A stretch of 64,000 nucleotides of DNA from Paragordius varius (Eukaryota; Animalia; Nematomorpha). Each line of letters starts with the position of its first letter. Within the stretch, counting starts at the first letter, position 1. The stretch spans positions 6,014,001-6,078,000 of the forward strand of contig OZ176055.1 in the NCBI GenBank assembly GCA_964247055.1, given 5' to 3'. Positions 16,298 to 64,000 of the stretch are shown here, in pieces. Below the pieces are notes generated by a model, which worked only from the letters and a program-made list of their open reading frames with translations, was not told the origin of the DNA and searched no databases. A program made the position numbers and the translations under genes.

Positions 16298-19200
16298 ATG
16301 ACCAAATATTCAAAAAAGACTAATAAGTAATTATATTTAATATTTAGATTAAACTATCATGGACAGCAAAATCAACTTAAGGATTTAGCAACAACTTTGA
16401 AAAAATCAGAGGGTAAAATAGCATTAATTATCTCATCATAAATTATTAAAACCAATCATTCTTTAATAAAATGAGATATCTTTTATTTTTATATAGATAT
16501 ATTACTACCAAGATGTTTAATTATACGGAAGGATCACAAAGGGTATGGCTTAACTGTTAGTGGAGATAATCCAGTTTATGTTCAATCTGTTAGAAAAGGT
16601 TTATATTTTTTATAATTAATAGATGGAGCTGCCGATAAAGCTGGTGTCAGGGAAGGTGACAAAATTATTAAGGTATTTATTACTAAATGCTAATTATAAA
16701 ATCTTTGAATTGTTGCAATAAAATATCTTTTTCCAAATTATTAGGTAAATGGGAAATTGGTCACTCACGCAAATCATGTTGAAGTCGTTCGACTCATTAA
16801 AGGTAAACTTTTGCAAAATTTTTTTATATTATATTGATTATAACATATTTGGATTTAATGTTTGTCGCATCTATTTCAAAAATTTTTAGTGATAATTTAT
16901 ATATTCATTATTAAATATTTATTTTGGGATAACCGCCCAATCAAAAACTTATAAATTATTTTCTAAACTTATCATTTTTTGGAATCAAGAATGATCAACG
17001 GGTTTCACAACCTATTTAAGTATATTTATTTTCAGATTTATCTGAAAATTGCACTTGAACAAATTTTAACTTTTAGGTTAAGATGCCTTATTACACAGAA
17101 ATACATATATGTATATCATTTATCTATATTGTTATTGTTTTTACGTCAAAAGATGTTTGTGTGTTAAATTATAACATATATTTATATGCGACAACAAAGT
17201 GTTAAAAAATTTGACATGAAAACCTTTAAACTATTTCTTGTATACGTTTAACTTTGTTTCGTTTTGAATATAAGAAACATCTCAGAATCCACATACTTAT
17301 AAGCAATTTCTTTATCATAATCTATTATTTCTTTTGGGACTTTTTTAAAAATATTTTAAATTTGTAGTCATAATTTGCAGTGATTTTTTACGATACCCGC
17401 TTATGAATTGAAAAGATAGGGCCTGTTTTCTGAGGAAATAAGAAAATGTTTAAAATATCGTATAAAATGGCACATTTACATGTACCATAGTTTTGTCTAA
17501 TTCTTAATTTTTTTGCATAAATTTAAACCTATAAAAAATGAATGCTCTTTTATTTATACCATTAATTATCTATCTTCTATACAATATTTTTCATAATATT
17601 ATAATTATTCCAATAGAATGAATGATATTGTAATTATTGATCTGTCGTACTTATTTTTGCATTTTAGCCATTGTCTTTAATTTGAGTCTTTAAAACAATA
17701 CATAGCATTTTTGTTGTGTCATCGTTGTGATAATTTTACTGGTTATATTTTATATCATACCGGGTCAAATACATATTGATTATTATATTGTAATGAATTG
17801 ACTGACCCTTAAATTAAAATCTTAATCTTGATTATCTTACAAAATTAATTAAATAATATCTTAATTTCCTCTCACTTCCAAGAAACATTGCATGTGGTTA
17901 GTGTACCTGCTTGTACTTTTTAATATTGAAAAAAGAACCATCCACATGCCTAGTTTGATCATCTTTAAAATAGATACATACAAACAGATATAAAGGTTTT
18001 GTTCTGTCCAATTTACCAAAGACATATTGATTAATTCGTAATACATAATGATATATATACATAAAAAGCGACATTTATGGTGTATAAATACTTTCTTTAT
18101 ATTATATCTAATTAACCATGTACAATTATAGCAATAATAAGGCTTGAGTATATACCATTTTTACCTTATTTTTTATGTTTCCATAATTTCCGATCATATT
18201 TTGTGTTTTGTTGACATTACACAATACATCTTTGTCTGTTTATTTATTTATTTAAGTTTTGAAACATTGATTAAAATGAACAATTTCTTTTCGAACTTTG
18301 CGTTTGCACATTTAAATGATATATTCATTCCTTCTATTGAATTGACAATATTGCAGGCATACAATTAGTAAAATTCAACACCTTATCTATGCTTAAAATA
18401 TATATCTATATATGTATATCATATGAAAAAAATTGAATACGACGTATATGTGTAAAAAGTGAGTTTTGATATCATAATTTTAAATTTGACTCTTGCTATG
18501 TTTAGAATTTGCGTATCTATTTCTCTAATCATTGCCTTTGCTATTGCTTCTGTATTGTATTGTCTGTGTGCGTAGTGTACGTAATACTAATGTTTGGTGT
18601 GGTGAATGACTTTTAATGACATTTTTTCCTTTCTGGTATCTCTATCTATCCTGCCTTCTTGCATCACATATTTATACCATCATCATCAAATATGCAATAA
18701 TGTTTTTTATCTGTACATATCAAATGCGCCTTTTTTGCAAAAGCTTTTCTTTGAATCATATATTTGTAAAGAATAATTACACTAACGTATGGTATAAAAC
18801 AACGTCTGTGTCCATAATTGAATAATAATATAGGGAAAAATGTTTAATTGTAACACCATTTGTTGTTTTTTACATACACTACTGGAACATTTTCATTTAA
18901 TACTTTTTATATAGGTATGAACCATATTGTCATCGGTATACTTTCTATCTTTTACAAGTTCTGAAATCATTGCCAATATTTTTTGCTTTTTACTTTATAA
19001 GTGAAAGTTGACTTTTTTGTTTGAATTGTTTCGAACAAACGACCTAGCTTAGATAGAGGTCTGCTACCACAAAACATTTATTGGCATAGTTTTGTCGTTT
19101 TATTTTTGCTATTTTATACTTTATGATCCATATTTTTGGCAGCAAGCTAATAGAAATAGTTACCTGTAGTTGTCAAATATGATAAAACGAAATAATTTGA

Positions 19201-22200
19201 GTTTTTTCCCTACATTATATAAAATTTTGTGAGTGGATAATTAACATATATTGTATTGCTTGCTATATACATCTTGAAAAACGTATTTTGTAAATTTCAA
19301 GGACGGACCTTTTTTACAATTCTTTCTTAATTATTTAATAGTTATAATAAATAACTTTTTAAAACAAAACAACATATTTTTATCTATGGTCCGTCCATCC
19401 AGGCTAAAATTATTTTTTCTCTGCTGTTGAAAATGATTTTTTTAAACACTTTTTATTATAGAGATTAATTAATTTCTCATATATTTTAATTTAGATCAGG
19501 GGTGTCCAACACTAATCGCTTAGCGGACCGCATTTGAAATATACATGGGCATTCATTATAAACGTAAGACTGTAATATGCCTATACAATTAAACAGTTTA
19601 TACTAGTTTTTGTTAATTGGGCAGAATTATTTATAATAAATTGTTTGAGAAACATCAATTTAACTAAGATTTTGTTAGCATAATTTTTTAAATTTTGAAT
19701 TTTCAAACTTTCGCGGGCCGCACGAAATCTCCCTTGATTTAGATGTATGATAAAGTTTGGTGTTTTATCCAAAAGTAGGAGATCTAAGATACAGTAGCGT
19801 ATGGCATAAAACAATGTTAGAAAGAAAAATATTTTTTTTAACTAAAAACTAGTTGTATATAGGCATATATATCCCCCTTTTTAAAAATATATTTATTTAT
19901 TCTTTTATGGACTAATATTGTTTTATTCTATACGTAACTGTATATTTTTTCTGACCAAATTCAATGATTTAATTTAAATTCTGGCAGATAAATAAAATAA
20001 TACATAAAAAGTTGTATGTTTTTAATTGTTTATTTTTGTTAAAATTAAATATAAAACATACATAATAAATAAAGTCAACAATTTGTCAAGAGGCTCTATT
20101 TATTATTATTATAGCTTGCTGCGTCAATTATATATAGGAGAGAGTGAGTTATGTCCTCTTTTTTATATAATATAAAATTATTTTTTTGCAGCGCATATAT
20201 TATTCGCATCTCAACCATTCTATGTAATAATTAATTAATTATTAAGGTCATTTTATATGACAATGGACGTATAATTATGTAATGTTACAGTAGGGTATGG
20301 TAAAAAACAACAAATGTTGTTTGAAATTAAACAAATTATTTCCCGTATTTTAGCATTTGTTTTTATGGATTAACTTGTATGTTCATACTAAATTGTAGGC
20401 TTAGTCTGAAATAGAGAGGGGTAGCTCAATTTTTTTTTAAATTATTGAAGTTTAATTTTGAAATCAATAAAAAATAGTGGAACGCTTGCGGATATCTGCG
20501 AACTGGTTTGAAAAATTCTTTGTTTGTCATTTTGTAATTTTTTATGGTCGGAGGTCTGAAAATATGGGCTATTTTAAACGGACTAAAATTTACTTCGTGG
20601 ATGCATTCATTAAACATTTAAGTATATTAAACCGAAGCATTGCTCTTTAATATAATTTGGCCGTCATAAATACAACCTTATTTCCAAAAAAATATTGTTT
20701 TTTTATTTAAGCTAAGCTATAACATTTGCATAATTAATCAAGTATGGTAATATATATGTGCTGCTTATTAGAGGTATGGTATGCGTAGATTTCACAATAT
20801 CTGCAATGGAATTTGTAATATAGTTAACTCACACTTTTATTATTTTTTCTATAAAATCTATCACCTTTTGCAAGAAAAAAAGTTCATACCTAGCTATATC
20901 ACCTAAAAAATATTTGCTTACAAGATGACACTCTTTATCTTTACGATTGTTTTATCATATTTTTACCTTTCGGCTTTAATGTGCTAGTTTTTTTTCACAC
21001 ATCATTAATAGTTTTGTTTGAATAGATTGTCTGTCGTTCGAATTTCAAATTGTTTTTTGAACTAATTTTTATTTTTATCTACCTCTATTTGAAAAAATGG
21101 TGCTAATTCCTTTATTCAAGTAAAATTTATATATAAAGATATCTTTCATATGATGCGATTTTCTGAAGTTTTAATATTATTTGAGCAACAGGCATTGTAT
21201 ACAAAACTAATTTGTAGTCTAGTAAACATCTAAGAGTTTTGCCTTGTAACTTATTTCATTGGAGTTTTTAACTACAAATTTTAAAATTATTTAAAAATTT
21301 TCTCCATTTTTAATTAGATGAGTATGCCTTAAAATATTTAAAATTTTATAAAAGTTGTGCTACATTAATTATCGGTTAACACACACAACACACAGCACAG
21401 TTGGATAGATGGAATGATGAAATGATTTGGTTATTTTAAAGTGTTTGGTTTGGTTCTGCTTGCAAATAGAAGCACAAAACGTATCCGTTTTTAGTTTATA
21501 ATTTTAATTTTTTCAATTTTTCCAGTTTTTTTCTCTGCATAAAACATCTTTCTAAAATTTGATTTAAATTATTTTTTTTCATTCCGGTATCATCATAAAA
21601 TGTATGTTATGTTCTCTCTCTCCGAATATTGTAAATGCTATCTATCTATATTGATTTATATCTTTTTTCCAGTGCAATGCAACTCATATCTATAAGCCAC
21701 CACAAGTTTTCTTTCTTCCTGTGATGAGGATTGGAAAAATTTAAAAATAAAAACTGAATATTTCAATTTTTAAATTTTTTGGTTAAATTATTATCGTAAA
21801 TATATGTTTTGTAATCCATGATTTTATCAAATCTATTATTCTATCATCATATGAAAATTGAGAAGGTATTCTATTATATATTTGTTCGATCATTTGTTAA
21901 TTATTATTATCATTTCTTTTTACATCATTTACTGACTAGATGTAGTATGTATGTAATAAATATGTATGGTAAGATATTTGGAATTTGAACTTTAACATAG
22001 AATAAAATAAAAAAATCAGTAACTAACCAGCAGTGGTAGAATTTATTTTATTTAATATATTAGGTTTTTTCAGTTTTATGGTAAGATTTTGTTTCACTAA
22101 CTGGTTGTTAGTCAAACCTTAATTTGACTCAAAATATTTTTTTAAAATCTAAATTTGGTGTCCACAGTTTTATAAATGAATGATTCTTTATACAATTAAT

Positions 22201-25200
22201 TATTATCGACATGGCTTTTAGATAAGATGTATTTTAATGATTTGTGATGAATAAATGATTAAATCATATAACATGGTAGTATCCATAAGTTTTAAGAATT
22301 TAAGTAATATACACTTTTATAGATTGGTCGGTAGTTTTACCGTAAAGGCTAAGCACCCATTTAAACCACAAAGAAATTTATTGATTTCTTTTATTTTCAA
22401 TTTAGCTTCATCGTATGTCGCATTGACCGTTTTGGGAGGATCATCCAACACTCACCTACAACAGTTTCCAACATCCTACAATGACAATGTTAATGTAAAT
22501 TCATCAACTTCAAATACTTGCATTAACACTAACAGAAATAATTTCAATTTAAGCGAAAAAGATTCCTCAGATTTCCAAATCATAAACAATTACCTTTTAC
22601 GACAAAAAGATCAACAAGGCGTTAGATCACACCTAATTCAAAATAGGAGCGGTTCACAATTTTTAACTACAGCAGTCTCGGGTAATGTCAACGGAGATTA
22701 CACATCCGCATTCGATGGGAATTGTGTTCGAAGAGCTGGTGGTGATACCGCGTCACCCTTTTTAACACCCCAAATTGGGCCCAAGCATGGGGGAAATGCG
22801 CGATTGCTGTTATCATTAAACTCAAATGGAAACCTTACGGACAATAATAGAATTATTAATAATAATAATTTTAACAAAAATATTGACTCCAATTATAATA
22901 ATAATAATAATAATGGGAAAGCGTTTCAAACAACAAACTCGTTTACTTCCATAGATGATCATATTACCCCTAAAATTTCATCCGTTATAAATCCTACTTG
23001 TCAAACGTTCACATCAAATAGAAACGGTAAAGATACAACTGTTAATGGTATACTACCGACGACTCGACTTTCAAATACAACGACACTTTTACCCAAAGAG
23101 TCCAAAAACTCTCTTAATAAGGATACTGAGGTAGTTATTAATTATTGCTTCAAAATTAATTGTAAAATGAGTTTTTTAACTAGTAATATTATACCATTTA
23201 CAGTTCGAATTTACCCTAAAACAATTTAAATTCACCCTTGAACAATTCAAATTTACCCTCGAAAAATTTAAATTCACCCTCGAACAATTCAAAATCACGC
23301 TAAAAGAAATTACGTGTTTTTTAACAAAATTACCAATATTTTTTATAGAAAAAAATAAAATTACCTGGAAATATATATAATACTGAAAAAATAATAAACC
23401 ATGCCATAAGATTAATGATGAGTTAGATTAGCCCGAAAACACATAATTTATTTTAGGGTGAATTTGAATTGTTCAAGGGGGAATTTGAATTGTTCGAGTG
23501 AGTTCGAATTGTTCAAGGGTGAATTTGAATTGTAAATGGTATATAATAACTGATTGACAGTTTACACATATAGTCAACACGATAAAAAGTAATCTTATTC
23601 AATACTTAGTATGCAAATACGTCTAACTAAACATTTAAATTTTCACAAAGAAAAATGTAAAAAATGAAAGTGGTTCAAAGTTAAAAACTTTATTATTTAA
23701 TAATTTAATTTATCCACTCGTCGTTATATACCATTTACAGTTCAAATTCACCCTTGAACAATTCAAATTTTTAAATTCAAATTCACCCTTAAACAAGTCC
23801 ACCCTCAAACAATTCAAATTCACCCTAAAATAAATTATGTCTTTAAAATTAAAAATTATCTATATATATTTCTACTTTTATGAAATGAAATTTTGTCTAA
23901 AACTAATATAATACTGAAAAAATAATAAACTTAGTCATAAGAATATATGCTATATTAATGATGAGATATATTAGCCCGAAAACACATAATTTATTTTTAG
24001 GGTGAATTCGAATTGTTCAAGGGTGAATTAGAATCGTTTAAGGGTGAATTTGATTTGGGGTGAATTTGAATTGTTTGAGGGTGAATTTGAATTGTTCAAG
24101 GGTGAATTTGAATTGAAAATGGCATATTACATTTTTATTGTATCACACTTGATAAAAGCAAGCTTAGTTTAAATTTTTCTGGACTGGCCGGACTCCAAAC
24201 CCATTCAAAATACTTGGGTCTTAGAAATTTTTTAATATCAACTTTTTTTATTCAAATTTTTTATTAAATTTAAAATATTTTTACCATATTCAAAATTTTG
24301 CATACGCATGATCTAAAATATTAATAAAGTAATGGAAAGGGACTTTTTTGATAAAATCATTTATTTAAATAATTCTCGTTTGAAAAAAATATTGATTGTG
24401 TGTTTGTGACAAATTATGATAAATTTATTTTTTTTTCGCTTTAATTTTTTACTGATAATATTAGCCAACTGGGGATTTTATTCAGCTTATATGTGTGTGT
24501 TTTTTTATTAGTAAAAATAATGAAAAAAATGGTTAAGGAAGTATACCGCTATAACTGATATATGCATTAAACTATCTAAGCCAATTTATTTATATACGTT
24601 TTTTTTCAACATACTTATAGTTTATTAATTGTTTTTATGATCGTTTCGTATTTTGATTTAATTTTGCTAGAATGTTCTTAACCAAAACCACAGTTCAGTA
24701 AAAGACCAAATTTCAACGTTAAAAAAGTTGTATAATCAAGAAGCTATTATATTTCAGGTATATCTATATATATATATATATACTTTTTTATTTAATCATT
24801 TAATTTTTTTATTGGTTTTTATTGACATATGATGATGCATGTTAGAATTTGCAAAAACAGTATCTATATAATCCATCCTACAAACTTAAACAAGAGCTAA
24901 ATGCGGTCAATCAAAGGTTAAATTCTATCAACGAAAATATAAATTCACTCCTAAATAATTATTCGATGTCAACCACCGCGGCCATATATAATCCGACACA
25001 TTCGTTGGTAAGTTTATTAGTTTTTCTCCCTTAAATTTTTTCATTGCGCAAATTTTTTTATAATCAAATCGATTTAATTTATTTATTAATGTAAAAATGG
25101 TGTTTTAGGATCTAAATTGTTCAGATTTACGGCGAGGACCAACCTATATGGACAACAATAAATTAATGGGTATGCGTCTTTTGATTTAGCGACAATAAAA

Positions 25201-28134
25201 ACTTTTGTTAAATTATATTTTTTGCAAAAAAAATCTTTTTTTATCTTTGATTTATTCATAGTGAAACATGTATTGCAAATTGTAATTGTATTTACAAAAT
25301 TAATTATAATTAATTAATGGAAAACAAATTTATTTTTATGTAATTTTTAAAACTTTTTATTTTTTTGATCGCACAATCATTATTTGTTGATAAATCAATT
25401 AATTTTAATTTGAACAGAGAATGACCATGACATGGAAATGACAAATGGATTGTCACAATATCAATTAAGAGGCAACAAAGAACAACAAAACAATATGCTT
25501 GATTATGACGAGGAAAATAATTTAATTAAACAATTGCATAGACGTTCTACGGGATCAGTTTCATCATTGGTATGCGATTAATATTTTTTTTCGTAAATTT
25601 GCAAGTCATTTTTTGGTAGAGGTTTGGCAGACTCATAAGAATGGTTTGTTTTTGAGTAATTTTGTTAAAATGTATTCAAGTATATTGTAAATTTTAAAAA
25701 ATAGTTAATTAATTTATAATTGCCAAATGCACAATTTTATCATTATCGGTGTTAGTTTTTGACTGTTTCAATACAATTTAAGTCATGACCCATTAATTGC
25801 AAAAAAAGGAAAAAGGTGATTCTAAGGGGTGTCCAATACCAATGGCTTCGCGTCTCGCATTTTTGACTTAAAAAACCGGCAGGCCGTAATATATGATAAT
25901 TTTATGGGCCTTAATAAATATCTTTCGAGATTTCGAACATAATACTGGGAAATTAACAAAACAATTAACTCTTAGCCAATTCATTGCCAAAATTTTTAAA
26001 GGCTTATTCCGAAAATTGGTTTAAATACGGAATATCTAACTGTATATTCTTTATTTTATTTTATGATATGATCTAATATTAGTTGGATAAGTCAGTCCAT
26101 GATAAAAGTGCTCGAAATTCTCTCCACCTTTCCGACCAAAAATGCAACAAATCCAATAATTCTATGACAACATTCAATGGGCTTGGGAGTTTAACGGTAA
26201 CTCTAATTTCATTTTTGAAAAAATAAGTTTTTTTATTTAAAAGTTTAAAAATAATACAGAGAAAAACATAAATTCTAAAAGAATTGAAATTTGTTAAATT
26301 ATAAAAGTATAATTACGATTCTGTAATAGCTTGAGTGCGTTATTCTCCATTTTTTATTTTGCACCACAAATAACGATAAGAATAATTTTTAAAATCTAGT
26401 TTTAAAAGTGTATAGTTGTCTTTTATAGAATATTATTTGTCTTTGGGTTTTTTTCGTGTTGTCCGTATAACTTCAATTTTTAGTGTATTATTTAATTCTT
26501 AAAAAATTTTATTACATAGGTATTAAATAATATCTATTCCACACGAGAAGAGGAAGAAAATGCATTTATACCAAATTCCAAATCCTTTACGGAACATACA
26601 GCTAATATTGAACAACAAATAAGCAAACCTTCTAAGGAATTTCATTCAACAGAACAAAACCAACACCGATCTCAAGCACCGTCCCCCTCAAATTTTGATC
26701 ATTTTTATGAACCTATTATTGAACATTATAGAGGTCCTATTTTAATTTAGATTTAATCTTTATGTTGGTATTAATTGGTAGTCATAATAATAATAGGTTG
26801 GCCTTTATCAAATTTACAGTAAAGTTTTTTTTTCGGAAAAAATATGCCATTTCTAAGTTTTTGAATCCAGTTTCGAAACATATTACTAATCCATGACAAA
26901 TATGTAAGGGGATAGTTGAATAAATATTTTTGTCACGTTAATTTAAAATATTTATTTGACTTTGGGGTCAATACATTTATTTATTCCTTACTACAACAGA
27001 CATTCGAAATAAAAATTACAACAAAATTTTATCGTTGGAAGAAGAGGACGAAGATGAAATGGATCATGAATCCATTATTAATAAGGTTTTAATTTTTTTT
27101 TTTATTTTTCAATATTGTTCATTTTTTAACTGCTTACTCATTTATAGAAAATAATTAATTATAAATCTGATAAAATGTATAAAATAAAGTTTTTTATAAC
27201 ATAATAATTGATTAATTCTCCACAAAAACAGGGAAATTCCGGACCATTTGCTACGTTTGAACGATTAAAAGCGAGTCCAGCACATTTAGCCATATTCCTT
27301 AATTACCTTTGTTGCAATAGTGATCCCAATAGTTTGGTAATAATATTAATTATGTCATTTAATTTTTACCTAAATTTACAAATATAAAAATATTAATTTG
27401 AAATATTATATTATATTTTTCAGTTATTTTCCCTAATTTGTGATATCTATGATCGTGGGGGTTTGAAAGAACACCAATTATGGGCTTATGAAATACATTC
27501 ATCATTCATTGTACCAAATGCCATGTTAAAAATATCTATTCCTGACTCTCATATAATTCAAATTGGTACATACTTTATGCAATATTATTAATATATGTTT
27601 GATTTGATTGACCTTGGAATATATATATATATATATATATATATCTTTTATGTTAGATGATGTCCTTATGAAATCATGGACGGATGAAATTGCCATGAAA
27701 AATATATTTAGGTCCAGTAACCAGCATATTCAACAAGATATTGAGGAGAAACTTAGCGATTTCCGACTCAAAAGACAATTAGGTATATTGAAAAATCTTA
27801 TATAGCTTCAAATTACCGTTTTAAAACATAATAATTTGTAGATATATAAATAATTTTAATTTTACTTACGTTTCCCCTTATATTATACAAATTTGTAGGA
27901 TTAAGCAGTATATATGGTGATAATCCTTCCCTTGATAAGTTATTGGCTCCCTCAAACCCTTTGTCTGATAATAATAATAATCTAACATCCAACCTAACAA
28001 ATAATGATGAGTTATCTCGACGCGTCCTCTCTATACGGATTGCTGAACAAATTTACTTACAAATTGTGGATAAACTTATTGGGTTTTGGCGTGAAGATGT
28101 GGAGTTTGATGGAGTCACTAATACAGAGTATATC

Positions 28135-28167
<33 letters not shown>

Positions 28168-31100
28168 GAATTATGATTCGAAGTCGTTTTTTATATATTT
28201 AAAATACTTTTTGTTCTGGTATAGATGCCTACTCCTTTCAGCCGTTCTAACTTTGGCACGGTGTGTGTTGGAACCACAATCATCGATTAATAATATGATT
28301 AGTAAAGTAGAAGTCCCATCCATTGATGATAAATGCAAGCATAAAAATACGACATCCCATCATTCGAACATTAACACGGCTACAAAACCATTTCAATCGT
28401 CCAGTAACCTGCTATCATTCGTTAATAATATGCCCTCCCTTCTTCCATCTTTTTCGTCGTCGACACCTTACTTGTTGAATGGTTTGTCACCACCTTGCTC
28501 TAGTGTACAAAACAACAGCCATCCTAACCATAATAATAGTTTTAACAATAACACTGATATTATATTGTTACTGGTGAATAAAATCCCAACCCTTTGTGAT
28601 GCGCGAGAGTTTGAACATTTACCCATAGTATATCGTCGACTAGACTCTACATCGGTTCCCAGCAATAATAATTCACGGGGACAAAAAAATAGTAGTGGAA
28701 TATCTCACAATCTCCCAGCTAAATTTATACGATTCCCTTCAAGTTCAAACTTTAAACGCACTTCTGCATCCAACAATAATCAATTAGCAACGAGCCAAGG
28801 ACCAAAAATGGAGGATGAAAATAGCACATCTGTTGACGAGCTTGTTGTAAGAAATGGTGGGGTATTTTTATCGCGCATTGAAGCAACTATCCATCCTAGT
28901 CAGCAGGAATGTAAAGTTAAAAAGCAACATAAATCCATTTCTCGAATGGGTCATACCCTTACACCTTGTCAGTATATTCGGTTAACGTTTTGTGATAGGT
29001 GTCATACCATTCTACAGGGTCTTCGTCATCAGGGATACCAATGCTTAGGTTTGTCCCTTTCATTTTTTTAGAAAATTTTACCTTTTGGAAAAATATTTTG
29101 TTATAAAGCTAGTTAAAATAATATTTTTTTCCATAAGAATCCGTTTGTTTTCTCCTAATATTGATGAATATTAAAATTTTTATATAAAGCGGTTATTTAA
29201 ACTCAATACATTTCTTATCTTTTGTAAAAGTACCCTCTGTTAAAAACTATTTATACAGTTAATTTTTGAACATAATCTAAGGTTTTTTGAAATTTATTAA
29301 GTTTAAGTAAAAAAAAATGTTTGAAACGACAATGTTTTATTGCATCCTTTATGTTTCTTAACCAAGCAATTTTTTGTGAATTTTTCGGGTTTTTAAAATA
29401 ATTTAGCCTTTCCTATTTTTAATACCAAACCATTTCGTTCCCATGATATAGATTGTCAATATAATGTTCATCACACATGCATTGATGATATCGATGAATA
29501 TTGCCCTGGTAACTTAACGCTACCCGTTACTTCGTCACATCAAAATTTTATTAGCAATGAAAACAATAACAACGAAATTTTGCCCAAAATGCGCAATAAT
29601 CAGCAAATGCATAATATTATTCAAACCGGAAATAAACGACGTGAAACTAAAAGCATGCTTTTTGATAACACTCAAATATTTCAAACTACACAACCGTCCT
29701 CTGAAGGTTAGCACAATATACTTTTGTAGGAATGATCATTAAAGTTATGGTTAGATTAGAATTGTATTTTACAAACATCAATCGATGTAGATTTATAATT
29801 TAGTTGTAGGTGAGATAGATTAGGTTTTAAAGACACTTTTTGCTGCATTGTACAGTTATATCTTTTTCAATGCATTATCCCACCATTTTTATCATTTACA
29901 AGTTTATTACCCCTCACTATATATCAATTAGCTCCTTCTGATCATCTTGCATTTTTTTTCAAATAAAATTTTAATTTTTAGGTTATAATCGTTAAAGTTA
30001 AGTATACCTTTCTACAAACTTCTGTTATATTTGTGGGTATTATACCCTTTTAATTAGCCGATATTTATCCTTTATTCTTTATAAATGGAGGTGCGGATCC
30101 TCTATATATTCGTTAATGATATAATATCATAAATTAAAATAAAATTTTGGAGGAATATTATTTTCAAAGATGCTTAAATTTAAGTATTTTCTAAACTAGA
30201 TACTCCCGCTAACACCTCTTCCATCACAACTCCAATGACATCAAATACATCTGCTATCGGTTCATCTACATCATCCGTTTTTACTAACCTTGCGCGGTAT
30301 CGAAAATCAACGGCCGATCGACTTTTACCCAATTTTAGACGGGAAAATACGACGACGATCGAAGAAACAATCACCATTGAACCGCAAACCCAAACTACCA
30401 CAGTGACTTCATCAATGACACAAAAGACCGGACTGTTGACTAAACAAAATTCTTTTGTGAGCAGCACTTCCACGGCGGCGGCAATTAATATGATAACTAA
30501 TTCATCTTCTCATGTAAACAGTAGTAACACTAGTAGCAATATAATTCCACAAACCTTCAACAAATGGTTCCATTACAATAGTAGCAGTAATAATCATAAT
30601 TCTGGCCTGGTTAAAAACAAAAATATCAAGCAAATGACAACACAACCACAGCAGGGATCAAATGTCGCATCTTCGATTCCAGTTACGACGCAACAAATGC
30701 AACCTGTGTTACGGTCAGAAAGTATGAAAGCTAAGGTATGCTAAGAGTATATAGGGATAGTTTTTTGAAAGAATAATTGCGAAACCGTGTTGTTCTATAA
30801 AGAAAATGGTCCATTAAGAAATGAAATTACAGTAAAAATTAAAAAACGATTAAAATTGTTTTGTGAGGACAATTTTTATGAGTTGACGCTTTTCATCGCT
30901 TTATATGAAAATTCGATCGCTTCATTATTTTTTAAGAGTTTTTGTGCGGTTTCTCTGTTCCAATCAGGTTTATATGGAAAAATTTAACGTTATCTCACAT
31001 CTTTTTTAGGATTTATATTTATCAATCAGGTATTTTGCCTGAATTGCTTTTTGATCAAATATGAAATATTTTTGCATTGGAATATTTTACATTTGATTAT

Positions 31101-46900: not shown

Positions 46901-47066
46901 AGGACAAAAAAGTGACAAGGTAATGAAGTTATCAATAATTGTCATTGAAGTAACCACAAAATTTATGATAATAATTTAAAATTTATTTACACATATTGGC
47001 TAATACATATAAGTATAAGATATTAGTGTTTATTGCAATATACACACACATGTGGATATAGGGTGC

Positions 47067-49752
47067 TTATTGAAATATAATATTTCCATCCGTAGGTATG
47101 ATGTCTAAGCATGAAGGACCATGTTGTTTAAATATGCTTTCAGGGGCGTTATCATCACATGCAGTAAAATTAAATTGGGTGTACGAGTCCCAACCTGACT
47201 TCATTTCGGAATTCATCCAATGCGGGGAATGTCGATACATGGTACTACCATATCTATTGAGCATAAATCGTCCGGGGTTTGGGCTTGATTTGGCCCAAGT
47301 CATAATATCACCCGTTTTTAAGGGTACTAAGGAATAAGATTTCTTTGTCTTTTTTGTTTTAAATTTTTGATGATAAGACATTTTATGTTGCCCAAAAATT
47401 TCAATATGCTGTCCGAAACCCTGGAGAATGTATTTACCTCCTGCTAAAACACCATCCCTACAACACCAAGGTTTAGCGGCCTGATAAAATTCATAGCCCA
47501 TGGCGTGAAGTTTGACGGAGAGCGCAGCAATTTTCCTAGTTTGTGAGGATAAATAAGCTATATCCGCATCCCTGTCCCAAGGTAGAATTTGACTCATTTT
47601 GACGCTTCCTAGAAGGGTGCCCTCTTGCAATTCATAAGCCACGCCAGCTTTGTTTAACATGTTAAGTAAAGTGGTGAGCATAGTGTTAAACCTAAGTCTA
47701 CAACATGGACCTACAATACGGTTTAAGTCTCGTTTGTTGCAATCAATAGCTAAATCTTTCGACCGGCGTGTCATCAAATTATTAGGGTAAACGGGACAAG
47801 GGACGGTATAACTGAGAGTTTGATCCATTACATTTAAGGTATATTTTTCCAAACCGAATGCGTGCAAAAACTTTTTATATATTTGCAGATTTGTTTCAGT
47901 TTTTATGTTCGGAAAATTGGTAACCATAAACATTTGGTCAGGACATACTCCAATTTTAAATGGTTTCAAACTTTTGTAAAATTTGAGATGAAGATAATCA
48001 AATAAAAGGGTTGGATCTTTGATATGATCTAAAAGCGATAATATAAATATCAAAAATTTATTCTATAAAGACAAAACATAAAAACTGAAAGACAAATATT
48101 TTTTACAAAGACAGCCAAATTTTTTAAAACCTTGAATACTATATAATAGTTATATTTTGAAATGTGTGACCAATTGGTACTAATTTCTCTATTTCTTATT
48201 TTGAAAATAACCAAAACGATAAGTAATTAAAAAATTAAAGTTGATAATATATGGTTATCTATATGATGAAAATATTTGTCTATTAATGTTTTAAAAAATT
48301 ATATTTTTACTGTATATAATATTGAAAAGTGTCCAACACAAATGGCTTTGCGTGCCGCATTTGTAACTCGAAAAAGCCGGACAGATGGGGATCATAATTA
48401 TTTATTTCATACATACGACTGTAAATGCAAACAATATAACAATTTTTATAGTTTGTTGCTAATCTAATATCCTTAAACAGAAAATTTTTTACAGTTTTCT
48501 TGAAATTTTATTGGCATATTTTTGCAATTATAGAGTCCAAATTTTTCCTGAGCTGCAGGTTAGACCCCTCACCCTGATCTAGAATTAAGTAATAATATTT
48601 ACCCAACTCCGCAAAAATAGAAGTCCTCATCAAAATTGGACCGAAGGCATAATCACATATCAAACATTCATTCTTTGAATGAGCATATCCTTGTTGTAGC
48701 GTCCAAACTGAGTCCCAAATTTTTGATTGAAAACAATTCATATACCATTTATGAGTGTTAGCATCCTTTAAGGATCCAAAAACAGCATCAAATTTGTTAA
48801 GCAACGCATAATGCAATAAATGTGTTAAATTAAAATGTGTTTGGTCGAATACTAAATCCTGTTCATGTATGTAAAAGGCGTAAGGTAATTCCATTAGTTT
48901 TTGTGGTAAAAATTTTGATTTTATCCAAGTGGGATCTGTATTCCCAGTCGAATTTTGAGTTAATGAGTATATATGAGTGGACGTTAATATAGATATATGT
49001 TTAAACGGTAAATTAACTAAAAATGCACTGAGAAAATTTAAAGTTTTGGAGTTCGAATCATTCACATTAGTTTGATTTTCCGCCACAATAAATAACGATA
49101 CGAGAGAATATAGGTGACTTTGAAACGGACAGTTATGTAGATGTGGTCCATCGTTAAAAAATGGATAATTTTGAGAGGCAATTTTATAAGCTATTTGATT
49201 GCACGGTTGTAAAAATTTAGTCGATAACTGATTAGCTCTTGGGATATATGTGGGGTTGATGTTTTCTTTGATTTGAAATGAGATCCATTCATATTCTTTT
49301 GTTTTAGCCATTTTAATTGAAACTTTGTGCCCATACCGATACACGTAATGGGAAAAGGTCTCTTTTAGCAATACTAGTTGCAAGTGGTAAACGGTTTTTA
49401 TCAAATAATATAAAACATTGCGACATATAGGATCCCTCAACCCGGACCCATTTGCCGAATTGTTCAAACTATTATTCGGATGACAATAAATTAGTCTTTG
49501 TAGCAAATCGAATGCTAAAATATGGATTTTTTCAACGGGTTTCATGTAATAATGATTTGGTGTGTTTGAATTAATATTTTCAGGAAGCAGGATTAGTAAA
49601 TGTTTAGCAGAGGGTTTATGTGCTATCCATTTAGAGGAATATTCCACATCAAGTAGTGAATAGGATGAAATATATAGGAGAAATGAAACGGTGGAAAAGC
49701 AAATTCCAAAACCTAGGCAACAAACACGCAAACTTGACATGTTATTCTTCAT
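47067..49752 (-). CDS. FKRP: Fukutin-related protein (FKRP)-like LicD-family nucleotidyl/phosphotransferase, type II membrane, 2 exons, 703 aa
   Basis: Exon 49752-48603 has an N-terminal TM anchor (VCCLGFGICFSTVSFLLYI) and a stem with CFQSKIWDSVWTL...CLICDYAFGPILMRT. A phase-1 GT-AG intron (48602-48029) joins exon 48028-47067, which has the LicD motif YELQEGTLLGSVKMSQILPWDRDADI. Total 2112 nt. Orthology to vertebrate FKRP, versus an invertebrate paralogue, is not established. Confidence 0.85.
48324..48430 (+). mobile_element. hAT MITE left-end fragment in the FKRP intron
   Basis: GTGTCCAACACAAATGGCTTTGCGTGCCGCATTTGTAA; an inverted sister copy lies at 50915-50957. Confidence 0.65.
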
Positions 49753-50555
49753 ATAAAAGTTTAATTAGTTAATTTGTCGCGATCTTCTTTCTACCTAACC
49801 AAAAGATTAAAAAAATGTATTAGAGAGATAAAATATTTAAAAATGTCATACAATAGATATATATAAATTAAAGGATCAGACATATCTCGGTAAAATAAAA
49901 TAATTAAACTCTTTTAGTTAGTAAGCTAAAGTGAATTAGGCGCATGAAACATTTTTTTATTTCTAAAATAAAGAATAATCTTTTTATATTTTCTTTTTCT
50001 CAGAAAAAGTATATTTTTGATCTAATATTTCCGATACGTGTGATAATAAAAAATAAAACTATAAGAGACAATGTGCCTTAGCTCTTAATTTTCTACATAC
50101 TATTATTTATATTTGTCCGAGTTTGTCCAATATCAGGATATTGAGGTTGGTTTTTTTAATAAATTTGGCGTTTTGTAAGTTTATATCTTACAAATACAAA
50201 TAATTTTAAGCAATTTTTAATGGTAAAAAATTTTTACCCACCTAACCACCGCCAATCCACAAACCTATTAATTTATTGAGCTTTTCTCTGTAATTGTAAC
50301 TTTTATATAGGATAGCTTTTAGATAACTAACTAACTAACCAGGTTATGGACGTTCAAAAGTTATCCTGTTTTGAAAATATAAATACAAATAGTTATAGAG
50401 AAAATAAATTACATATTGTTCATTTAATGAATTGTTGCTATCTGTTTTTCTGTATAAATCTATATAATATTGTAAAATGAAATTAATATGTATTGCATGT
50501 AAGCCTTATACTTTTACTTAATCAAATTCCAATAAATCAAATTAAATCACACTTG

Positions 50556-50586
<31 letters not shown>

Positions 50587-56285: not shown

Positions 56286-56293
56286 ATCTAAAT

Positions 56294-56541
56294 CAAACAA
56301 ATGGCGACACGGACCGCATTCGAAATATGCATGGGATGTTATTAGATTTCGTAAATAAGGCTGTAAAATGCAAGCACAATAAAACAATTTTATCAAGTTC
56401 GTCACCAATTGGGTGGACGTATTCAAAATATTTGCATAATGAATATAAATTTTGTTAAGATTCTGTTTGCATTTTTGCAAATTATGCAATTTTACACGGG
56501 CCAACCTAATGTGGCGTAGGGTCGCGTGTTGTGCACCCCTG
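56294..56541. mobile_element. hAT MITE (same family as 19497-19736), left TIR eroded
   Basis: CAAACAAATGG..ACGGACCGCATTCGAAATATGCATGGG matches the 19505-19550 internal sequence. Right end GCGTGTTGTGCACCCCTG|ATCTAGAA. Confidence 0.7.
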
Positions 56542-58945: not shown

Positions 58946-59252
58946 CACTTCGATTCGAATTGTAACATTGATAGAAATAGAAAATATTTTGTATTATTAT
59001 TTAATTTTACCATTTTACATGTGTCACTTGACGAAATTTTTACCTTTCGGTTTTAGCTTAAAATAAGTAATCAAGTATTTTTAAATAAAATTTTTTACAT
59101 ATTTCGGTTTATCCATGTTATTTAAGTGCAAAATTTTTCCATGCTTTCAATTCCTTCAATATTTATTAAAGAATTTAATTCTAACAGGCCTGGTGTATCC
59201 AAGTACCCCAATTTGAATCGAAAGACAAAAATGAATGTCTTGTATCCAAGTG
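58946..59252. mobile_element. TTAA-flanked MITE, second copy
   Basis: TGAA|CACTTCGATTC ... GTATCCAAGTG|TTAA; 3' part matches 15370-15431. Confidence 0.6.
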
Positions 59253-59831
59253 TTAATAATCCTTACTACCAATATTAATTAAACTTCACTCGAGGCCATA
59301 TGAGGTAACCTGCCTTTTACACCTTAAACTCAATTTATTATAATATATTCTGTATGAGTTGTTAAATTTGCCATGTCATTCCCATGTCCATCCTTTTTAG
59401 GGTATTACATTTTTTGGGTTTAGCTTGATGACCAAACCAAATAATATTTTGTGGTCATTATATTTTACTCTATATCGTTTTTAATTATTTGAAATCATTA
59501 CATTGTGCTTGTTCAATTGTTTATAACGTATTTATCACCACAATACATATTTTGATCGATCGTTTCACATCCTAAGTATGATAAAAAAATATTTACCCTA
59601 AACTTAAAAAAACGATCTCATTCCTATCCCTAACCTTTGATTCGAACCAAATATAATTGTAAAATAGTCAATTTATATCAAATATCATCAAAGAAATTAA
59701 TTACAAATGAGATTTATTAAATTATATATTCATATTGCCATGATTATATAAATAATCATCTATGCTATAATTTTGCTCTGAGAGTAAAAGATAATTTATA
59801 TCCAGGGCGTGAGATAAAGTCAAACGCGATC

Positions 59832-62554
59832 TTAATCTTGAGGAAACTTTACCCCTATAATTTTGCGACATTCTTCAATCAATTTAGCGAATGTTAGGGT
59901 ATCTTTATGCGTTACGAGTGGACTTTCTTTCAATCCTATAAAAAATAGGAATAATTAATAATTTAATATGATAATTTATGGAAATAATAATGCTGTTTAA
60001 AATTTTTTTAAAAAATTCTTGAGATATCATAGTAAAGTTATAAAATACCAGAAAATATTATATCAACTGAAATTTAACAAAAAGCATAAAGTAATAATAC
60101 TTTGTCAATAGTTATCGTAACTAGTTTCATGTTGGTTAAAACTTACAGTACGACACAACTATGACTAGGATAAATGGTTTTACATATCACTTTATATTTT
60201 CTGAGATATTAGTTTAATTTGCTATTGGTTATTTTCATTATCTTATTTTAACTTTTTAGTGTTTCCAACATTCAAACATATATTTTTAAAAATAAAATAA
60301 TTTTTTCAACAATCTATGTTGCCCAATAGCTTTTTATTGTTTCCAACAATCAAACATATATTTTCAACAATCAAATAATTTTTCCAACAATCAAAATATG
60401 TTTTCTTTTAACTTTCTAGTATTTCCAACAATCAAATATATATTTTCAACAATATATCACGAAATTTTCAAAAGTTTAAAATAATTTAATACAAAAGACT
60501 CAAAACTTATTTCACTTACTAATCTTTAAAAAATCATAAAAATTTTACCAGCTTGAATGCAACGTTTGACTTCATTCGCCTCATATAAAAATCCGACACC
60601 ACTATCATACACCGGTTTCCCCTTTTCAGGCGGGAAAGGTTTCTCCATTAAAACGCCATTGATTTGTATTTTATCGCTACACCAAAACGGTGGATGGATC
60701 TATGAGATTTAAAGAATAAATAAAGCTTTCGTAATAATAAATAATTTGAAAATATTTATATTCTAGATAAATTATATGCAACCTTAATAATTCCCTTTGT
60801 GCCGCATACTATCCCTTCACGCGGAACTTCAGTTGTAAACGCAACTTGAAAAACGGCCATTCTTTGACCACTATATTCAAACGTTACGCTGTCCAATTCA
60901 TCTACGCCTAAAAGAAATGTAAAATTCTGGAAATATTGTAATATTAAATTATAATTGGGAATTTTTTGTGAAATCAAAACTATTTCGAAAAAGGGTTTCA
61001 AACGGTTGTTCGAAAATTTTCATTATTTAGTTAAAGGATAGCAAAGATATTTATTGCTTTTGTGACTATATATTGGAAGAATTCATATTCATCAAAAAGA
61101 ATAGACTAAGGTTTAACCAAGAATTTATAAATTTATATCACATAACCTTAACAGAGGCAAAAAATGATAAATAAATTATGTGTATTCTAAATCACTGGTA
61201 TTAAAAAGTAAATACAAGCGATTAAAACGTTTTTTAAAACCAAAACGCGGGCAAAAAATACATTTAGCAAATTATTACGATTACTGTAAAATTAATAGGA
61301 AGTTAACATTCTCTATATATATTAGTATTATTTGTTATTTTATAAATCAAATATTTATTTCAATCTCTTTGAAAAATATCATATTAAATTTTTGTAGCTA
61401 TTAAGTTTTAATTATTTCAATTATATCAGATTAGGATATATTAAAATGGATTAAAATCAAAATTCTCCAAAAACAATTGAATAGAAACCATATTTTTGCA
61501 AAGAAAACCCTGGAAACAGAATTGAAACTGTTCTGTCAAAAATTTATTTTAAACCCGAACCTAAGCCCAGGTAAATTCTACCTCGAAAATTAAATTACTA
61601 TGCAAATTTGGTAAAAGAATTGTTGCGTATATATAATACCATTTTCGTTAAGAAAGCCAATCGGAGTAATTTTTTTAGGCATTTCCCCAAACACCATTTG
61701 AGAAAACGCGATGCAATATACTCCCTTATCCATCATACAACCACCACCAATTTCAGGCTTAAAAAGACAAAATAATAATAAAAAATGAATATTGATTGAA
61801 GACAAAATATAATTTATTCTCTTAATTTTATCATTGAAAATCAAAAAAAGTAAAAATTTTTATTTTTGGTTAAAAACCAATTTTTCAATATATAAAATTA
61901 AATAAGTTAGGTACATGATAAAGTCTTTGCATTTCTGGTCCGGATGCCGATCCAAATGAAGATAAAACAAGTTTAACATCACCAATCGTACCCTTTTTAA
62001 GTTCTTCTCTCAATATAGCTTGTGTAGGAAAACAACGGGCCCACATACCCTGATAAAAATATAAAAATAGACAATTAAATAAGAGCAAAAAATATAATTG
62101 TTGAGGATATGTACCTCCATAAAGAAGACACCCTTTTGGTTAGCCAATTTTATCATTTCCTCTGTCTCACGATAATTCATACCCAGGGGTTTTTCGCACA
62201 AAATATTTTTATTGTATTTAAGCAACATTTTAACAACTTTAAGGTGCTCACTATTAATGACCGAAACATATATTACGTCTAAATATGACAAATAAAAACA
62301 AACCTAATTCAGAATCTTTGCCTAATTCTTCATAACTTCCATATGCTTTTGGAATTTGACGTTCAGAGGCAAAAGTTTTCGCTTTTTTCAAATCTCTAGC
62401 GGCAACGGCCATAATCTATTATAATAAACATATTTTGCACCTTATGTCCATTATCAGGGTCACTTAAGAGACCGATACAGAAATCATTAGAAATTCTACC
62501 AGCGGAACATATTCCCCATCTCAATGGTTTATCAGCGGAGGATGAATCAGCCAT
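59832..62554 (-). CDS. DHDH: Trans-1,2-dihydrobenzene-1,2-diol dehydrogenase-like (Gfo/Idh/MocA oxidoreductase), 8 exons, 340 aa
   Basis: Exons 62554-62441, 62415-62304, 62278-62115, 62049-61915, 61757-61640, 60907-60783, 60699-60549, 59935-59832 (1023 nt). Motifs [31 protein letters not shown]|[44 protein letters not shown]. Confidence 0.93.
60243..60455. repeat. Degenerate tandem repeat (TTTCCAACAATCAAACATATATTTT units) in the last DHDH intron
   Basis: Three longer units at ~60260, ~60340 and ~60420, plus shorter TTTCAACAATC subunits. Confidence 0.7.
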
Positions 62555-62632
62555 TTACAAAGCGTGATAATGAAAAACTAAGGTTATTTTTACAACCCAT
62601 TCAAAATACCTTACTTAAAAACAATTTTACAT

Positions 62633-63100
62633 ATGAATATTACCACTGCTGAATTAAAGAAAAAAGCCTTTTTGCGAAGGAATGCGATAGAGATTTTATA
62701 TAAAATGCTACAAATCACAAGGTTTGAAGAGAGAGAATTAGAATCATTTGTAAATTAAGCTTATAAATTAAGCTACCATACATTGAGCGGCAGGATTTTT
62801 TGGATTTTATCCTAGAAAGATCTTTGGATCCTATTTGTGGTAATCCGTTTTGCACAAATACCGAGGTTTACAAATTTAAATAGTAGCGAGTTAATGAAAG
62901 AAAAAGCAAAGTATAAAATAGATAATTCAAAGCAAAAATTGTATTTATCCTCTGAACTTGAAAAATTTTGTAGTGTTAACTGTTACGAAAAAACTTATTC
63001 ACGATTAAATGCCATACCAGAAGTTGCACTTTGGCTTCGCCCCGAATGCCAAGCTTTATTGCAAAATTATGATTTTGAACACGATATTCAGCGCATTTAA
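62633..63100 (+). CDS. RPAP2: RPAP2/Rtr1-like putative RNA polymerase II CTD phosphatase, minimal form, 3 exons, 139 aa
   Basis: Exons 62633-62749, 62773-62865 and 62891-63100 give DFLDFILERSLDPICGNPFC..KAKYKID...EKFCSVNCY...PEVALWLR, with all four Zn-binding Cys. AATAAA at 63118-63123. Confidence 0.8.
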
Positions 63101-63900: not shown

Positions 63901-64000
63901 CTTCTTTATATTTTGTTTAGCTATTGTATCCAACCGAAACAATCAGCTGATTTTAAGAATGTATAATTTTTTTGCAAGCCCTAATTAAAACATTAAAGTT

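What the first reader, a model, noticed from the sequence alone, without database searches (positions are those of the whole stretch)
16298..62890. Micro-introns occur only near the 5' ends of genes: possible cap-proximal splicing mode
Seen: of the 7 introns within the first ~230 coding nt of a gene (RhoGEF introns 1-3, DHDH 1-2, RPAP2 1-2), 6 are 21-25 nt. Of the 40 introns further downstream, none is. Established: the nuclear cap-binding complex promotes U1 recruitment and splicing of cap-proximal introns. Inference: ultra-short introns may be spliceable only with cap assistance, or 5' introns may be selectively shrunk. Caveats: only three genes contribute, the RhoGEF start is uncertain, and stop-free 3n micro-introns deep in low-complexity exons would be invisible to me.
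Basis: partly seen in the sequence, partly recalled or inferred. Interest (0 to 1): 0.8.

Follow-up and report, generated by a model that had tools for sequence, protein, structure and literature searches.

The report
Tiny introns only at gene starts
In this AT-rich worm genome the introns nearest the start of three ordinary genes are only 21-25 bases long and every later intron is at least 65 bases; blood flukes show a milder form of this layout, and its cause (perhaps help from the RNA cap) is still untested.

Summary
I modelled 45 introns in PDZ-RhoGEF, DHDH and RPAP2. Six are 21-25 nt, all at coding positions 29-226. The other 39 are 65-5603 nt, and none is 26-64 nt (Fisher 8.6e-7; about 2e-4 within genes).

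- **Confirmed introns:** four micro-introns are confirmed by exon-by-exon alignment to solved structures or Pfam, with no gap at the junctions. These are both DHDH introns, the RhoGEF PDZ intron and RPAP2 intron 2.
- **Less certain:** RPAP2 intron 1 rests on reading frame only. RhoGEF intron 1 is uncertain.
- **Old introns, shrunk:** both DHDH micro-introns sit at intron positions shared with many other animals.
- **Few hidden cases:** at most 3-5 weak candidates downstream.
- **No RNA:** every run I could lay was DNA, so neither excision nor transcription starts are shown. The DHDH and RPAP2 start codons are 78 nt apart head-to-head, which suggests short 5' UTRs.

The scan found the same 5' confinement earlier in at least eight other windows of this genome, reaching about 500 coding nt. 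Small 5' introns are published for Schistosoma mansoni. Introns under 30 nt are published only for myxobolids and Dicyema, where they are genome-wide. The cap-assistance idea is plausible, since a roughly 250-nt cap-binding-complex range was inferred in Drosophila, but it is untested. Verdict: a new, more extreme variant of a known layout.

The parts
16298..41079 (+). PDZ-RhoGEF gene (PDZ, RGS-like, C1, DH and PH domains). Curated model of 37 exons with an open 2588-codon frame.
   Evidence: Pfam RhoGEF and PH_16 on exons; PDZ exons match the LARG and PDZ-RhoGEF PDZ structures; model and frame check. The start codon is uncertain.
16327..16347 (+). RhoGEF intron 1, 21 nt, coding position 29. 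Uncertain.
   Evidence: Exon 2 has no in-frame ATG, so an upstream exon is required. ATG 16298 with this GT..AG fits the frame. ATG 16279 with a 58-nt intron also fits.
16413..16496 (+). RhoGEF intron 2, 84 nt, coding position 94. The one early intron that is not a micro-intron.
   Evidence: Frame logic; dynamic-programming model.
16599..16622 (+). RhoGEF intron 3, 24 nt, inside the PDZ domain, coding position 196.
   Evidence: Read-through hits a stop codon. Exon 3 aligns to 2omj_A residues 6-36, the exon 4 piece to 38-56 and exon 5 to 55-74, so the three are collinear with no insertion or deletion.
16673..16744 (+). RhoGEF intron 4, 72 nt, coding position 246. The first intron beyond the micro-intron zone.
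   Evidence: Same PDZ collinearity.
59832..62554 (-). DHDH (dimeric dihydrodiol dehydrogenase) gene, 8 exons, 340 codons.
   Evidence: Full-length homologues P0026 and P0056 align collinearly with all 8 exons; Pfam GFO_IDH_MocA.
62416..62440 (-). DHDH intron 1, 25 nt, phase 0, coding position 114.
   Evidence: Exon 1 aligns to 2o48_X residues 3-29 and exon 2 to 31-65. Other animals' exon fragments break homology at the same place. DNA runs carry a +T insertion at 62432 inside it.
62279..62303 (-). DHDH intron 2, 25 nt, phase 1, coding position 226.
   Evidence: Exon 2 aligns to 2o48_X residues 31-65 and exon 3 to 69-122. The position is shared with many animals.
62050..62114 (-). DHDH intron 3, 65 nt, coding position 390. 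The shortest intron of the ordinary class.
62555..62632 (.). 78-nt spacer between the head-to-head DHDH and RPAP2 start codons; presumed bidirectional promoter.
   Evidence: Sequence. The transcription starts themselves were not observed.
62633..63100 (+). RPAP2/Rtr1-like gene, 3 exons in the model, 139 codons.
   Evidence: Pfam RPAP2_Rtr1 on exons 2 and 3; frames.
62750..62772 (+). RPAP2 intron 1, 23 nt, coding position 117.
   Evidence: Frame logic only: the shift from exon 1 to the zinc-finger exon needs a length of 2 mod 3. The intron overlaps a 13-nt tandem duplication.
62866..62890 (+). RPAP2 intron 2, 25 nt, coding position 210. Passes over AGs that would give 18- and 21-nt introns.
   Evidence: Only the 25-nt choice restores the frame. 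Exon 2 matches Pfam profile positions 2-29 and exon 3 matches 36-67.
47070..49764 (-). FKRP-like (LicD family) gene: two large exons and one intron of about 500 nt, roughly 1.1-1.2 kb from the start. No micro-intron.
   Evidence: Pfam LicD and the PDB FKRP entry 6kaj. The 23-nt candidate at 48063-48085 was rejected because its upstream 'exon' appears to be a repeat copy.

Best explanation
These are genuine, old GT-AG spliceosomal introns that have shrunk to 21-25 nt. In this window they occur only within the first ~230 coding nt. Every intron further along keeps the ordinary minimum of about 65-100 nt or is much longer. So the shortest tolerated intron length depends on position along the transcript. 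This is a 5'-to-3' intron-size polarity like the one in schistosomes, but sharper and shorter.

The mechanism I think most likely is inferred, not shown. While the nascent RNA is still within a few hundred nt of its cap, splice-site pairing gets extra help. That help could come from the nuclear cap-binding complex, which contacts U1 and the tri-snRNP, and/or from the initiation-phase Pol II tail. With such help, introns too short for ordinary cross-intron U1-U2 assembly can still be removed. A general pressure to delete then shrinks each intron to the local limit. Being near the 5' end permits a micro-intron but does not force one: RhoGEF intron 2 is 84 nt and sits between two micro-introns.

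Shown: the introns, their lengths and positions, the gap in lengths, and the ancient positions of two of them. Inferred: excision in RNA, closeness to the cap, and the role of the cap.
For: - Collinearity without insertions or deletions across four micro-introns.
- Two length classes with an empty 26-64 nt gap, and strict 5' placement.
- DHDH introns 1 and 2 lie at intron positions shared with many animals.
- A 1-nt insertion inside DHDH intron 1 occurs in DNA runs, which fits non-coding sequence.
- The donor +3 base is A in 2 of 6 micro-introns against 32 of 39 others (p = 0.025). That suggests weaker U1 pairing near the 5' end, as reported for Drosophila first introns together with a ~250-nt range for a putative cap-binding-complex effect (PMC4889658).
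- The cap-binding complex binds the tri-snRNP (PMC3708526; abstract only, listed).
- The DHDH and RPAP2 start codons are 78 nt apart.
- Small 5' introns are typical of S. mansoni (PMC3254664).
- At least eight other windows of this genome carry the same note (unchecked leads).
Against: - No RNA evidence for excision or for transcription starts: all four runs laid were DNA contigs.
- Only three genes contribute, and RhoGEF intron 1 is uncertain.
- The cap-binding complex classically helps only the first intron, yet RhoGEF intron 3 is a micro-intron.
- Earlier scan notes put micro-introns as far as ~500-520 coding nt, beyond the ~250-nt range inferred in Drosophila.
- Overall match to the 9-base donor consensus does not differ significantly between the classes (p = 0.17).
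- Upstream non-coding exons or trans-splicing cannot be excluded.
Confidence: 0.4

Rival explanations
1. Selective shrinkage without a special splicing mode. Micro-introns could be spliced anywhere, but strong selection for compactness acts only next to promoters. Possible reasons in this 75% AT, repeat-rich genome are keeping cryptic poly(A) signals and transposon insertions out of the promoter-proximal zone, or keeping 5' splice sites closely spaced for U1 'telescripting'. Elsewhere the ~65-100 nt class is the better optimum.
For: All early introns are short, including those that are not micro-introns: RhoGEF has 21, 84, 24 and 72 nt, then 5603 nt; DHDH has 25, 25 and 65 nt, then 157-732 nt. 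Long downstream introns carry repeats. The telescripting model for gene 5' ends is published (PMC4889658).
Against: It does not by itself explain the empty 26-64 nt gap, or why none of 14 minimal downstream introns has drifted below 65 nt. The poly(A)-hexamer count in the first 300 nt of four genes is not clearly depleted: 4 seen against about 6.5 expected.
Confidence: 0.3
2. Ascertainment artefact. Micro-introns exist all along genes, but downstream ones whose length is a multiple of three and which carry no stop codon are invisible inside long, low-complexity exons.
For: Large RhoGEF exons are low-complexity and cannot be checked by homology. A few candidate segments exist.
Against: About two thirds of micro-introns would shift the frame, and most of the rest would carry a stop in AT-rich sequence, so most would be visible. 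Across roughly 11 kb of modelled exon sequence (about 9.2 kb of coding sequence in the three genes plus 2.2 kb of FKRP-like exons), only 3-5 AT-rich GT..AG segments of 18-30 nt with a length divisible by three exist downstream, apart from one at the FKRP-like long-intron donor. Every DHDH exon is collinear end to end with full-length homologues, and conserved RhoGEF exons match Pfam DH and PH models.
Confidence: 0.05
3. Recently gained introns. Micro-introns are new insertions or intronised exon pieces that arise preferentially near 5' ends, for example by small tandem duplications.
For: RPAP2 intron 1 overlaps a 13-nt tandem duplication that includes the donor. Another scan note (s1-252849) describes introns of this genome built from duplicated exon edges.
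Against: DHDH introns 1 and 2 lie exactly where many other animals have introns, in the same phase. Earlier scan notes report orthologous longer introns in a related hairworm and other animals (unchecked).
Confidence: 0.05
4. Not introns at all: assembly insertions, or segments bypassed in some other way.
For: No RNA proof of excision.
Against: Independent DNA runs reproduce parts of the region, including part or all of several micro-introns (table 8). All six segments start with GT and end with AG, are 72-92% AT, and their removal restores exact collinearity.
Confidence: 0.02

Closest known systems
Small 5' introns of Schistosoma mansoni genes (Protasio et al. 2012, PMC3254664, citing the 2009 genome paper)
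   Same: [quoted passage not shown]
   Different: From my own knowledge, not checked here, schistosome small introns are mostly about 26-40 nt and the pattern is a gradient. Here the class is 21-25 nt, is sharply separated from a class of 65 nt or more, and occurs in a different phylum (a hairworm relative according to scan notes, which I did not verify). I know of no mechanism established in flukes either.
Ultra-short introns of myxobolid myxozoans and Dicyema japonicum (Hadjez et al. 2026, PMC13644364)
   Same: Animal GT-AG introns under 30 nt (medians 22-27 nt) at conserved positions, with reduced splice-site motifs.
   Different: In those animals the ultra-short length is the genome-wide median in compact genomes, and my term search of the paper found no positional restriction. 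Here micro-introns are a minority class confined to gene starts, in a repeat-rich genome with kilobase introns. Nematomorpha are not mentioned in that paper.
Cap-binding-complex enhancement of cap-proximal splicing (Izaurralde 1994 and Lewis 1996, cited in PMC4889658; Pabis 2013, PMC3708526; Lepennetier and Catania 2016, PMC4889658)
   Same: A 5'-end-specific boost to splice-site recognition. In Drosophila, first-intron donors are weaker near the cap, and the inferred range of ~250 nt is close to the ~230-nt zone seen here.
   Different: The known effect concerns the efficiency of the first intron. It has not been shown to set a minimum intron length or to act on the second or third intron. 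No dependence on the complex was tested here.
General rule that first introns are the longest (Bradnam and Korf 2008, as cited in PMC4889658)
   Same: Intron length depends on ordinal position.
   Different: The direction is opposite: here the first introns are the shortest.

Membership tests
Spliceosomal GT-AG intron | GT at the 5' end and AG at the 3' end | tested here: met
   All six micro-introns.
Spliceosomal GT-AG intron | Removal restores the reading frame and collinearity with homologues | tested here: met
   DHDH introns 1 and 2 against 2o48_X and P0026/P0056; RhoGEF intron 3 against 2omj_A; RPAP2 intron 2 against Pfam RPAP2_Rtr1. RPAP2 intron 1 and RhoGEF intron 1 rest on frame only.
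Spliceosomal GT-AG intron | Excision seen in RNA | not testable with these tools
   No listed run is on record as RNA. All four runs laid were DNA contigs that span introns, with no splice joints.
Animal ultra-short intron class (<30 nt; myxobolids, Dicyema) | Length under 30 nt at conserved intron positions | tested here: met
   Lengths are 21-25 nt. DHDH intron 1 and 2 positions are shared with many animals.
Animal ultra-short intron class (<30 nt; myxobolids, Dicyema) | Ultra-short length is the genome-wide norm (median) | tested here: not met
   Only 6 of 45 introns in the window are micro-introns; the median is about 157 nt.
Schistosome-type 5'-small / 3'-large intron polarity | Small introns at the 5' end and larger ones later, within the same gene | tested here: met
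   RhoGEF and DHDH. RPAP2 has only its two 5' introns.
Schistosome-type 5'-small / 3'-large intron polarity | The pattern holds across many genes of the genome | tested here: inconclusive
   Three informative genes here, plus the FKRP-like gene, which has no early intron. At least eight other windows carry the same note, but those are unchecked AI notes.
Cap-binding-complex-assisted cap-proximal splicing | Intron lies within a few hundred nt of the cap | tested here: inconclusive
   Micro-introns lie within 226 coding nt of the ATG, and the DHDH and RPAP2 ATGs are 78 nt apart head-to-head. Transcription starts were not observed.
Cap-binding-complex-assisted cap-proximal splicing | Weaker 5' splice sites near the cap | tested here: inconclusive
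   The +3 base is not A in 4 of 6 micro-introns against 7 of 39 others (p = 0.025), but the 9-base consensus match does not differ (p = 0.17).
Cap-binding-complex-assisted cap-proximal splicing | Splicing depends on CBP20/CBP80 | not testable with these tools
   Needs an experiment.

The most novel reading that the evidence does not exclude
This worm has a distinct splicing route that works only on the first few hundred nt of a nascent transcript. It might be driven by the cap-binding complex with the tri-snRNP, or by the initiating Pol II tail, and it might bypass ordinary U1-U2 cross-intron pairing. Such a route would allow introns of 21-25 nt that the standard pathway, with its minimum of about 65 nt, cannot remove. 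That would make minimum intron length a readout of cap-proximal spliceosome assembly.
Probability: 0.2. Interest if true: 0.85.

Novelty: new variant of a known kind. Interest (0 to 1): 0.6.

Why it matters
Two things follow if the pattern holds genome-wide.

First, standard gene finders, which use minimum intron sizes of about 30-40 nt or more, will mis-predict the 5' ends of many genes in this genome. The S. mansoni authors reported the same kind of problem when building models from RNA-seq.

Second, two sharply separated minimum intron lengths in one organism, sorted by distance from the gene start, would be a natural experiment. It bears on what sets the lower size limit of spliceosomal introns. 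It also bears on how far along a transcript the cap or the initiating polymerase helps splicing. Both questions have so far been approached mainly through weak statistical trends, such as those in Drosophila.

Tried and rejected
1. RNA evidence. The look-up of sequencing runs listed no run on record as RNA. Read laying on 58001-64000 with four runs gave only DNA contigs and no splice joints.

2. Relatives' loci. All three homologous-protein searches came back blank: the DHDH 97-aa ORF, the FKRP-like 331-aa exon and the PDZ exon ORF. I therefore could not fetch a related hairworm's DHDH/RPAP2 locus or test whether RhoGEF intron 3 is at a conserved position.

3. A 23-nt candidate at 48063-48085 in the FKRP-like gene. 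Rejected: by eye, the 47-codon 'exon' upstream resembles a repeat also seen at about 34270-34360 and 35090-35200. I did not align them.

4. A 23-nt candidate at 29707-29729 from my dynamic-programming gene model. Rejected: splicing 29706 directly to 30200 is already in frame, and the two tiny intervening exons are model artefacts.

5. A generic scan for frame-restoring GT..AG segments of 18-32 nt was too noisy to use alone.

6. Poly(A)-hexamer depletion in the first 300 nt was inconclusive.

7. Rfam found nothing in the window.

8. The Berriman 2009 paper is not held. I relied on Protasio 2012, which cites it.

9. Searching a joined (spliced) protein model was left out. All database searches were exon by exon, by reference. 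Exons were joined only inside scripts to check for stop codons.


Full report
**What the window is.** The window is 23-32% GC throughout. I found five protein-coding genes among repeats:
- the 3' part of a UCH-type ubiquitin hydrolase (+, about 866-2165);
- a PDZ-RhoGEF (+, 16298-41079);
- an FKRP-like LicD-family gene (-, 47070-49764);
- DHDH (-, 59832-62554);
- RPAP2 (+, 62633-63100).

Earlier scan notes call the genome a horsehair-worm (Nematomorpha) relative. I did not verify that.

**Checking the observation.** I rebuilt the gene models by reading the sequence, with a small dynamic-programming exon chainer, and by curation.

The curated RhoGEF model has 37 exons and an uninterrupted 2588-codon frame. 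DHDH has 8 exons and 340 codons. tabulates all 45 introns.

Sorted, the intron lengths are 21, 23, 24, 25, 25, 25, then nothing until 65. Fourteen introns are 65-116 nt and 25 are 134-5603 nt.

The six micro-introns lie at coding positions 29 and 196 (RhoGEF), 114 and 226 (DHDH), and 117 and 210 (RPAP2). The only other intron before position 230 is RhoGEF intron 2 (84 nt, position 94). The next introns are at 246 (72 nt) and 390 (65 nt).

Fisher's test gives 8.6e-7 and Mann-Whitney on position gives 2.3e-6. The 230-nt cut was chosen after the fact and only three genes contribute, so the fairer figure is a within-gene permutation. By hand calculation it gives DHDH 1/21 times RhoGEF 3/630, about 2e-4, or about 4e-3 without the uncertain RhoGEF intron 1.

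**Are the micro-introns real introns?** No RNA could be used. The run search listed no run on record as RNA, and the four runs I laid on 58001-64000 were all DNA contigs that cross introns and show no splice joints. I therefore tested collinearity exon by exon, by reference.

- **DHDH.** Exons 1, 2 and 3 align to monkey DHDH (2o48_X) at residues 3-29, 31-65 and 69-122. Counting the unaligned end residues and the split codon, the two 25-nt segments fall between adjacent residues with no insertion or deletion. Full-length homologues P0026 and P0056 align with all eight exons in order.
- **RhoGEF PDZ.** Exon 3, the exon 4 piece and exon 5 align to the LARG PDZ domain (2omj_A) at 6-36, 38-56 and 55-74. 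The 24-nt segment contains an in-frame stop.
- **RPAP2.** Exons 2 and 3 match Pfam RPAP2_Rtr1 at profile positions 2-29 and 36-67. Only the 25-nt acceptor restores the frame; the AGs at 18 and 21 nt do not.
- **Frame only.** RPAP2 intron 1 (23 nt) rests on frame alone. RhoGEF intron 1 (21 nt) is uncertain. Exon 2 has no ATG, but ATG 16279 with a 58-nt intron would also fit.
- **Polymorphism.** DNA runs carry a +T insertion at 62432 inside DHDH intron 1. This is what one expects of non-coding sequence.

**Could later micro-introns be hidden?** A micro-intron is invisible only if its length is a multiple of three and it has no stop codon. In roughly 11 kb of modelled exon sequence, only 3-5 AT-rich GT..AG segments of 18-30 nt meet that condition downstream. 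One further match coincides with the FKRP-like long-intron donor. Conserved exons are collinear with homologues. Two candidate downstream micro-introns, 29707-29729 and 48063-48085, were examined and rejected. Ascertainment cannot explain the pattern.

**Shrunk or gained?** A search of the DHDH exon 2 peptide against 1.84 billion representatives returned many exon-sized ORF fragments from other animals' genomes. Their homology starts right after an acceptor-derived residue, just before the conserved VVAVAARD motif. It stops right after the conserved DPDV motif, at a G read from the donor. These are exactly the positions and phases of the two DHDH micro-introns. The introns are therefore ancient and have shrunk here. 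A few species lack intron 2 (P0021, P0043).

I could not repeat this test for the RhoGEF PDZ intron.

RPAP2 intron 1 overlaps a 13-nt tandem duplication (62748-62773). That hints at local sequence turnover, not at a clean gain.

**Closeness to the cap.** Transcription starts were not observed. The DHDH and RPAP2 start codons are head-to-head and 78 nt apart. If both transcription starts lie in that spacer, the four micro-introns lie within about 330 nt of the cap. Upstream non-coding exons, overlapping transcripts and trans-splicing are not excluded.

**Splice-site features.** The donor +3 base is A in 2 of 6 micro-introns and in 32 of 39 others (p = 0.025). The overall 9-base consensus match does not differ (p = 0.17). 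The sample is small.

**What is already known.**
- Protasio et al. [quoted passage not shown] The layout therefore has a published precedent in flukes.
- Hadjez et al. 2026 (PMC13644364) report animal introns under 30 nt only in myxobolid myxozoans and Dicyema. There they are the genome-wide median. My term search found no positional rule, and Nematomorpha are not mentioned.
- Lepennetier and Catania 2016 (PMC4889658) summarise the evidence that the cap-binding complex helps U1 at the cap-proximal donor. In Drosophila they report weaker first-intron donors near the cap and a putative range of ~250 nt.
- Pabis et al. 2013 (PMC3708526) show the complex binding the tri-snRNP (abstract only, listed).
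- I found no paper on hairworm intron sizes.

**Earlier scan notes.** The same 5' confinement has been noted in at least eight other windows of this genome. The stated reach is about 250 to 520 coding nt, and two notes say a related hairworm shares the layout. One note reports RNA support for micro-intron excision in another gene. These are unchecked leads. They agree with this window, and they also show that 230 nt is not a fixed boundary.

**Interpretation.** Four things are shown: real-looking micro-introns, strict 5' placement within genes, two separate minimum-length classes, and ancient positions for two of them.

The two classes are the key point. If position did not matter for splicing, minimal downstream introns should also drift towards 25 nt, yet none of 14 is under 65 nt. 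I therefore favour a position-dependent lower limit on intron length. Help from the cap-binding complex or the initiating polymerase is the most likely cause. I put 0.4 on the whole statement: about 0.85 for the position rule and about 0.3 for the cap specifically.

The main rival (0.3) is selection for compact promoter-proximal regions without any special splicing mode. The poly(A)-hexamer test I could run was inconclusive. Artefact, recent gain and 'not introns' together get about 0.1.

Noticed in passing
window 62748-62773: RPAP2 intron 1 overlaps a 13-nt tandem duplication (12 of 13 bases identical). The first copy carries the donor GT and the second carries the acceptor used. An AG in the first copy, only 10 nt from the donor, is not used.
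   Followed up: partly
window 62432: DNA runs X5 and X1 carry an extra T inside DHDH intron 1, so this micro-intron is 25 or 26 nt long in different haplotypes or individuals.
   Followed up: no
window 62555-62632: The DHDH and RPAP2 start codons are head-to-head with only 78 nt between them. Scan notes list similar pairs 40-43 nt apart nearby, which suggests very short 5' UTRs, overlapping transcripts or trans-splicing.
   Followed up: no
window 62866-62890: RPAP2 intron 2 passes over AGs that would give 18- and 21-nt introns and uses the one giving 25 nt. Only that choice keeps the frame. A separate scan note (s1-248913) covers this.
   Followed up: partly
window 60246-60454 and about 59000-59400 (DHDH intron 7): A tandem repeat (units of 78 and 21 nt) and a neighbouring stretch reach summed depths of 1e5 to 6e6 in the DNA runs, against a few hundred elsewhere. 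These are very high-copy satellite or repeat families.
   Followed up: partly
window 19490-19540 and 48560-48600; also 34270-34360, 35090-35200, 48130-48230: By eye, two short repeat families that look like miniature transposons recur inside introns. One copy produces a false 47-codon 'exon' in front of the FKRP-like exon 2. I did not align the copies.
   Followed up: partly
window 23180-23830 and 24000-24170 (RhoGEF intron 6): Minisatellite-like tandem repeats give long spurious ORFs on both strands.
   Followed up: no
all 45 modelled introns: Micro-intron donors often have T or G at +3 (GTT or GTG), whereas longer introns are mostly GTA: 2 of 6 against 32 of 39 have A at +3.
   Followed up: partly
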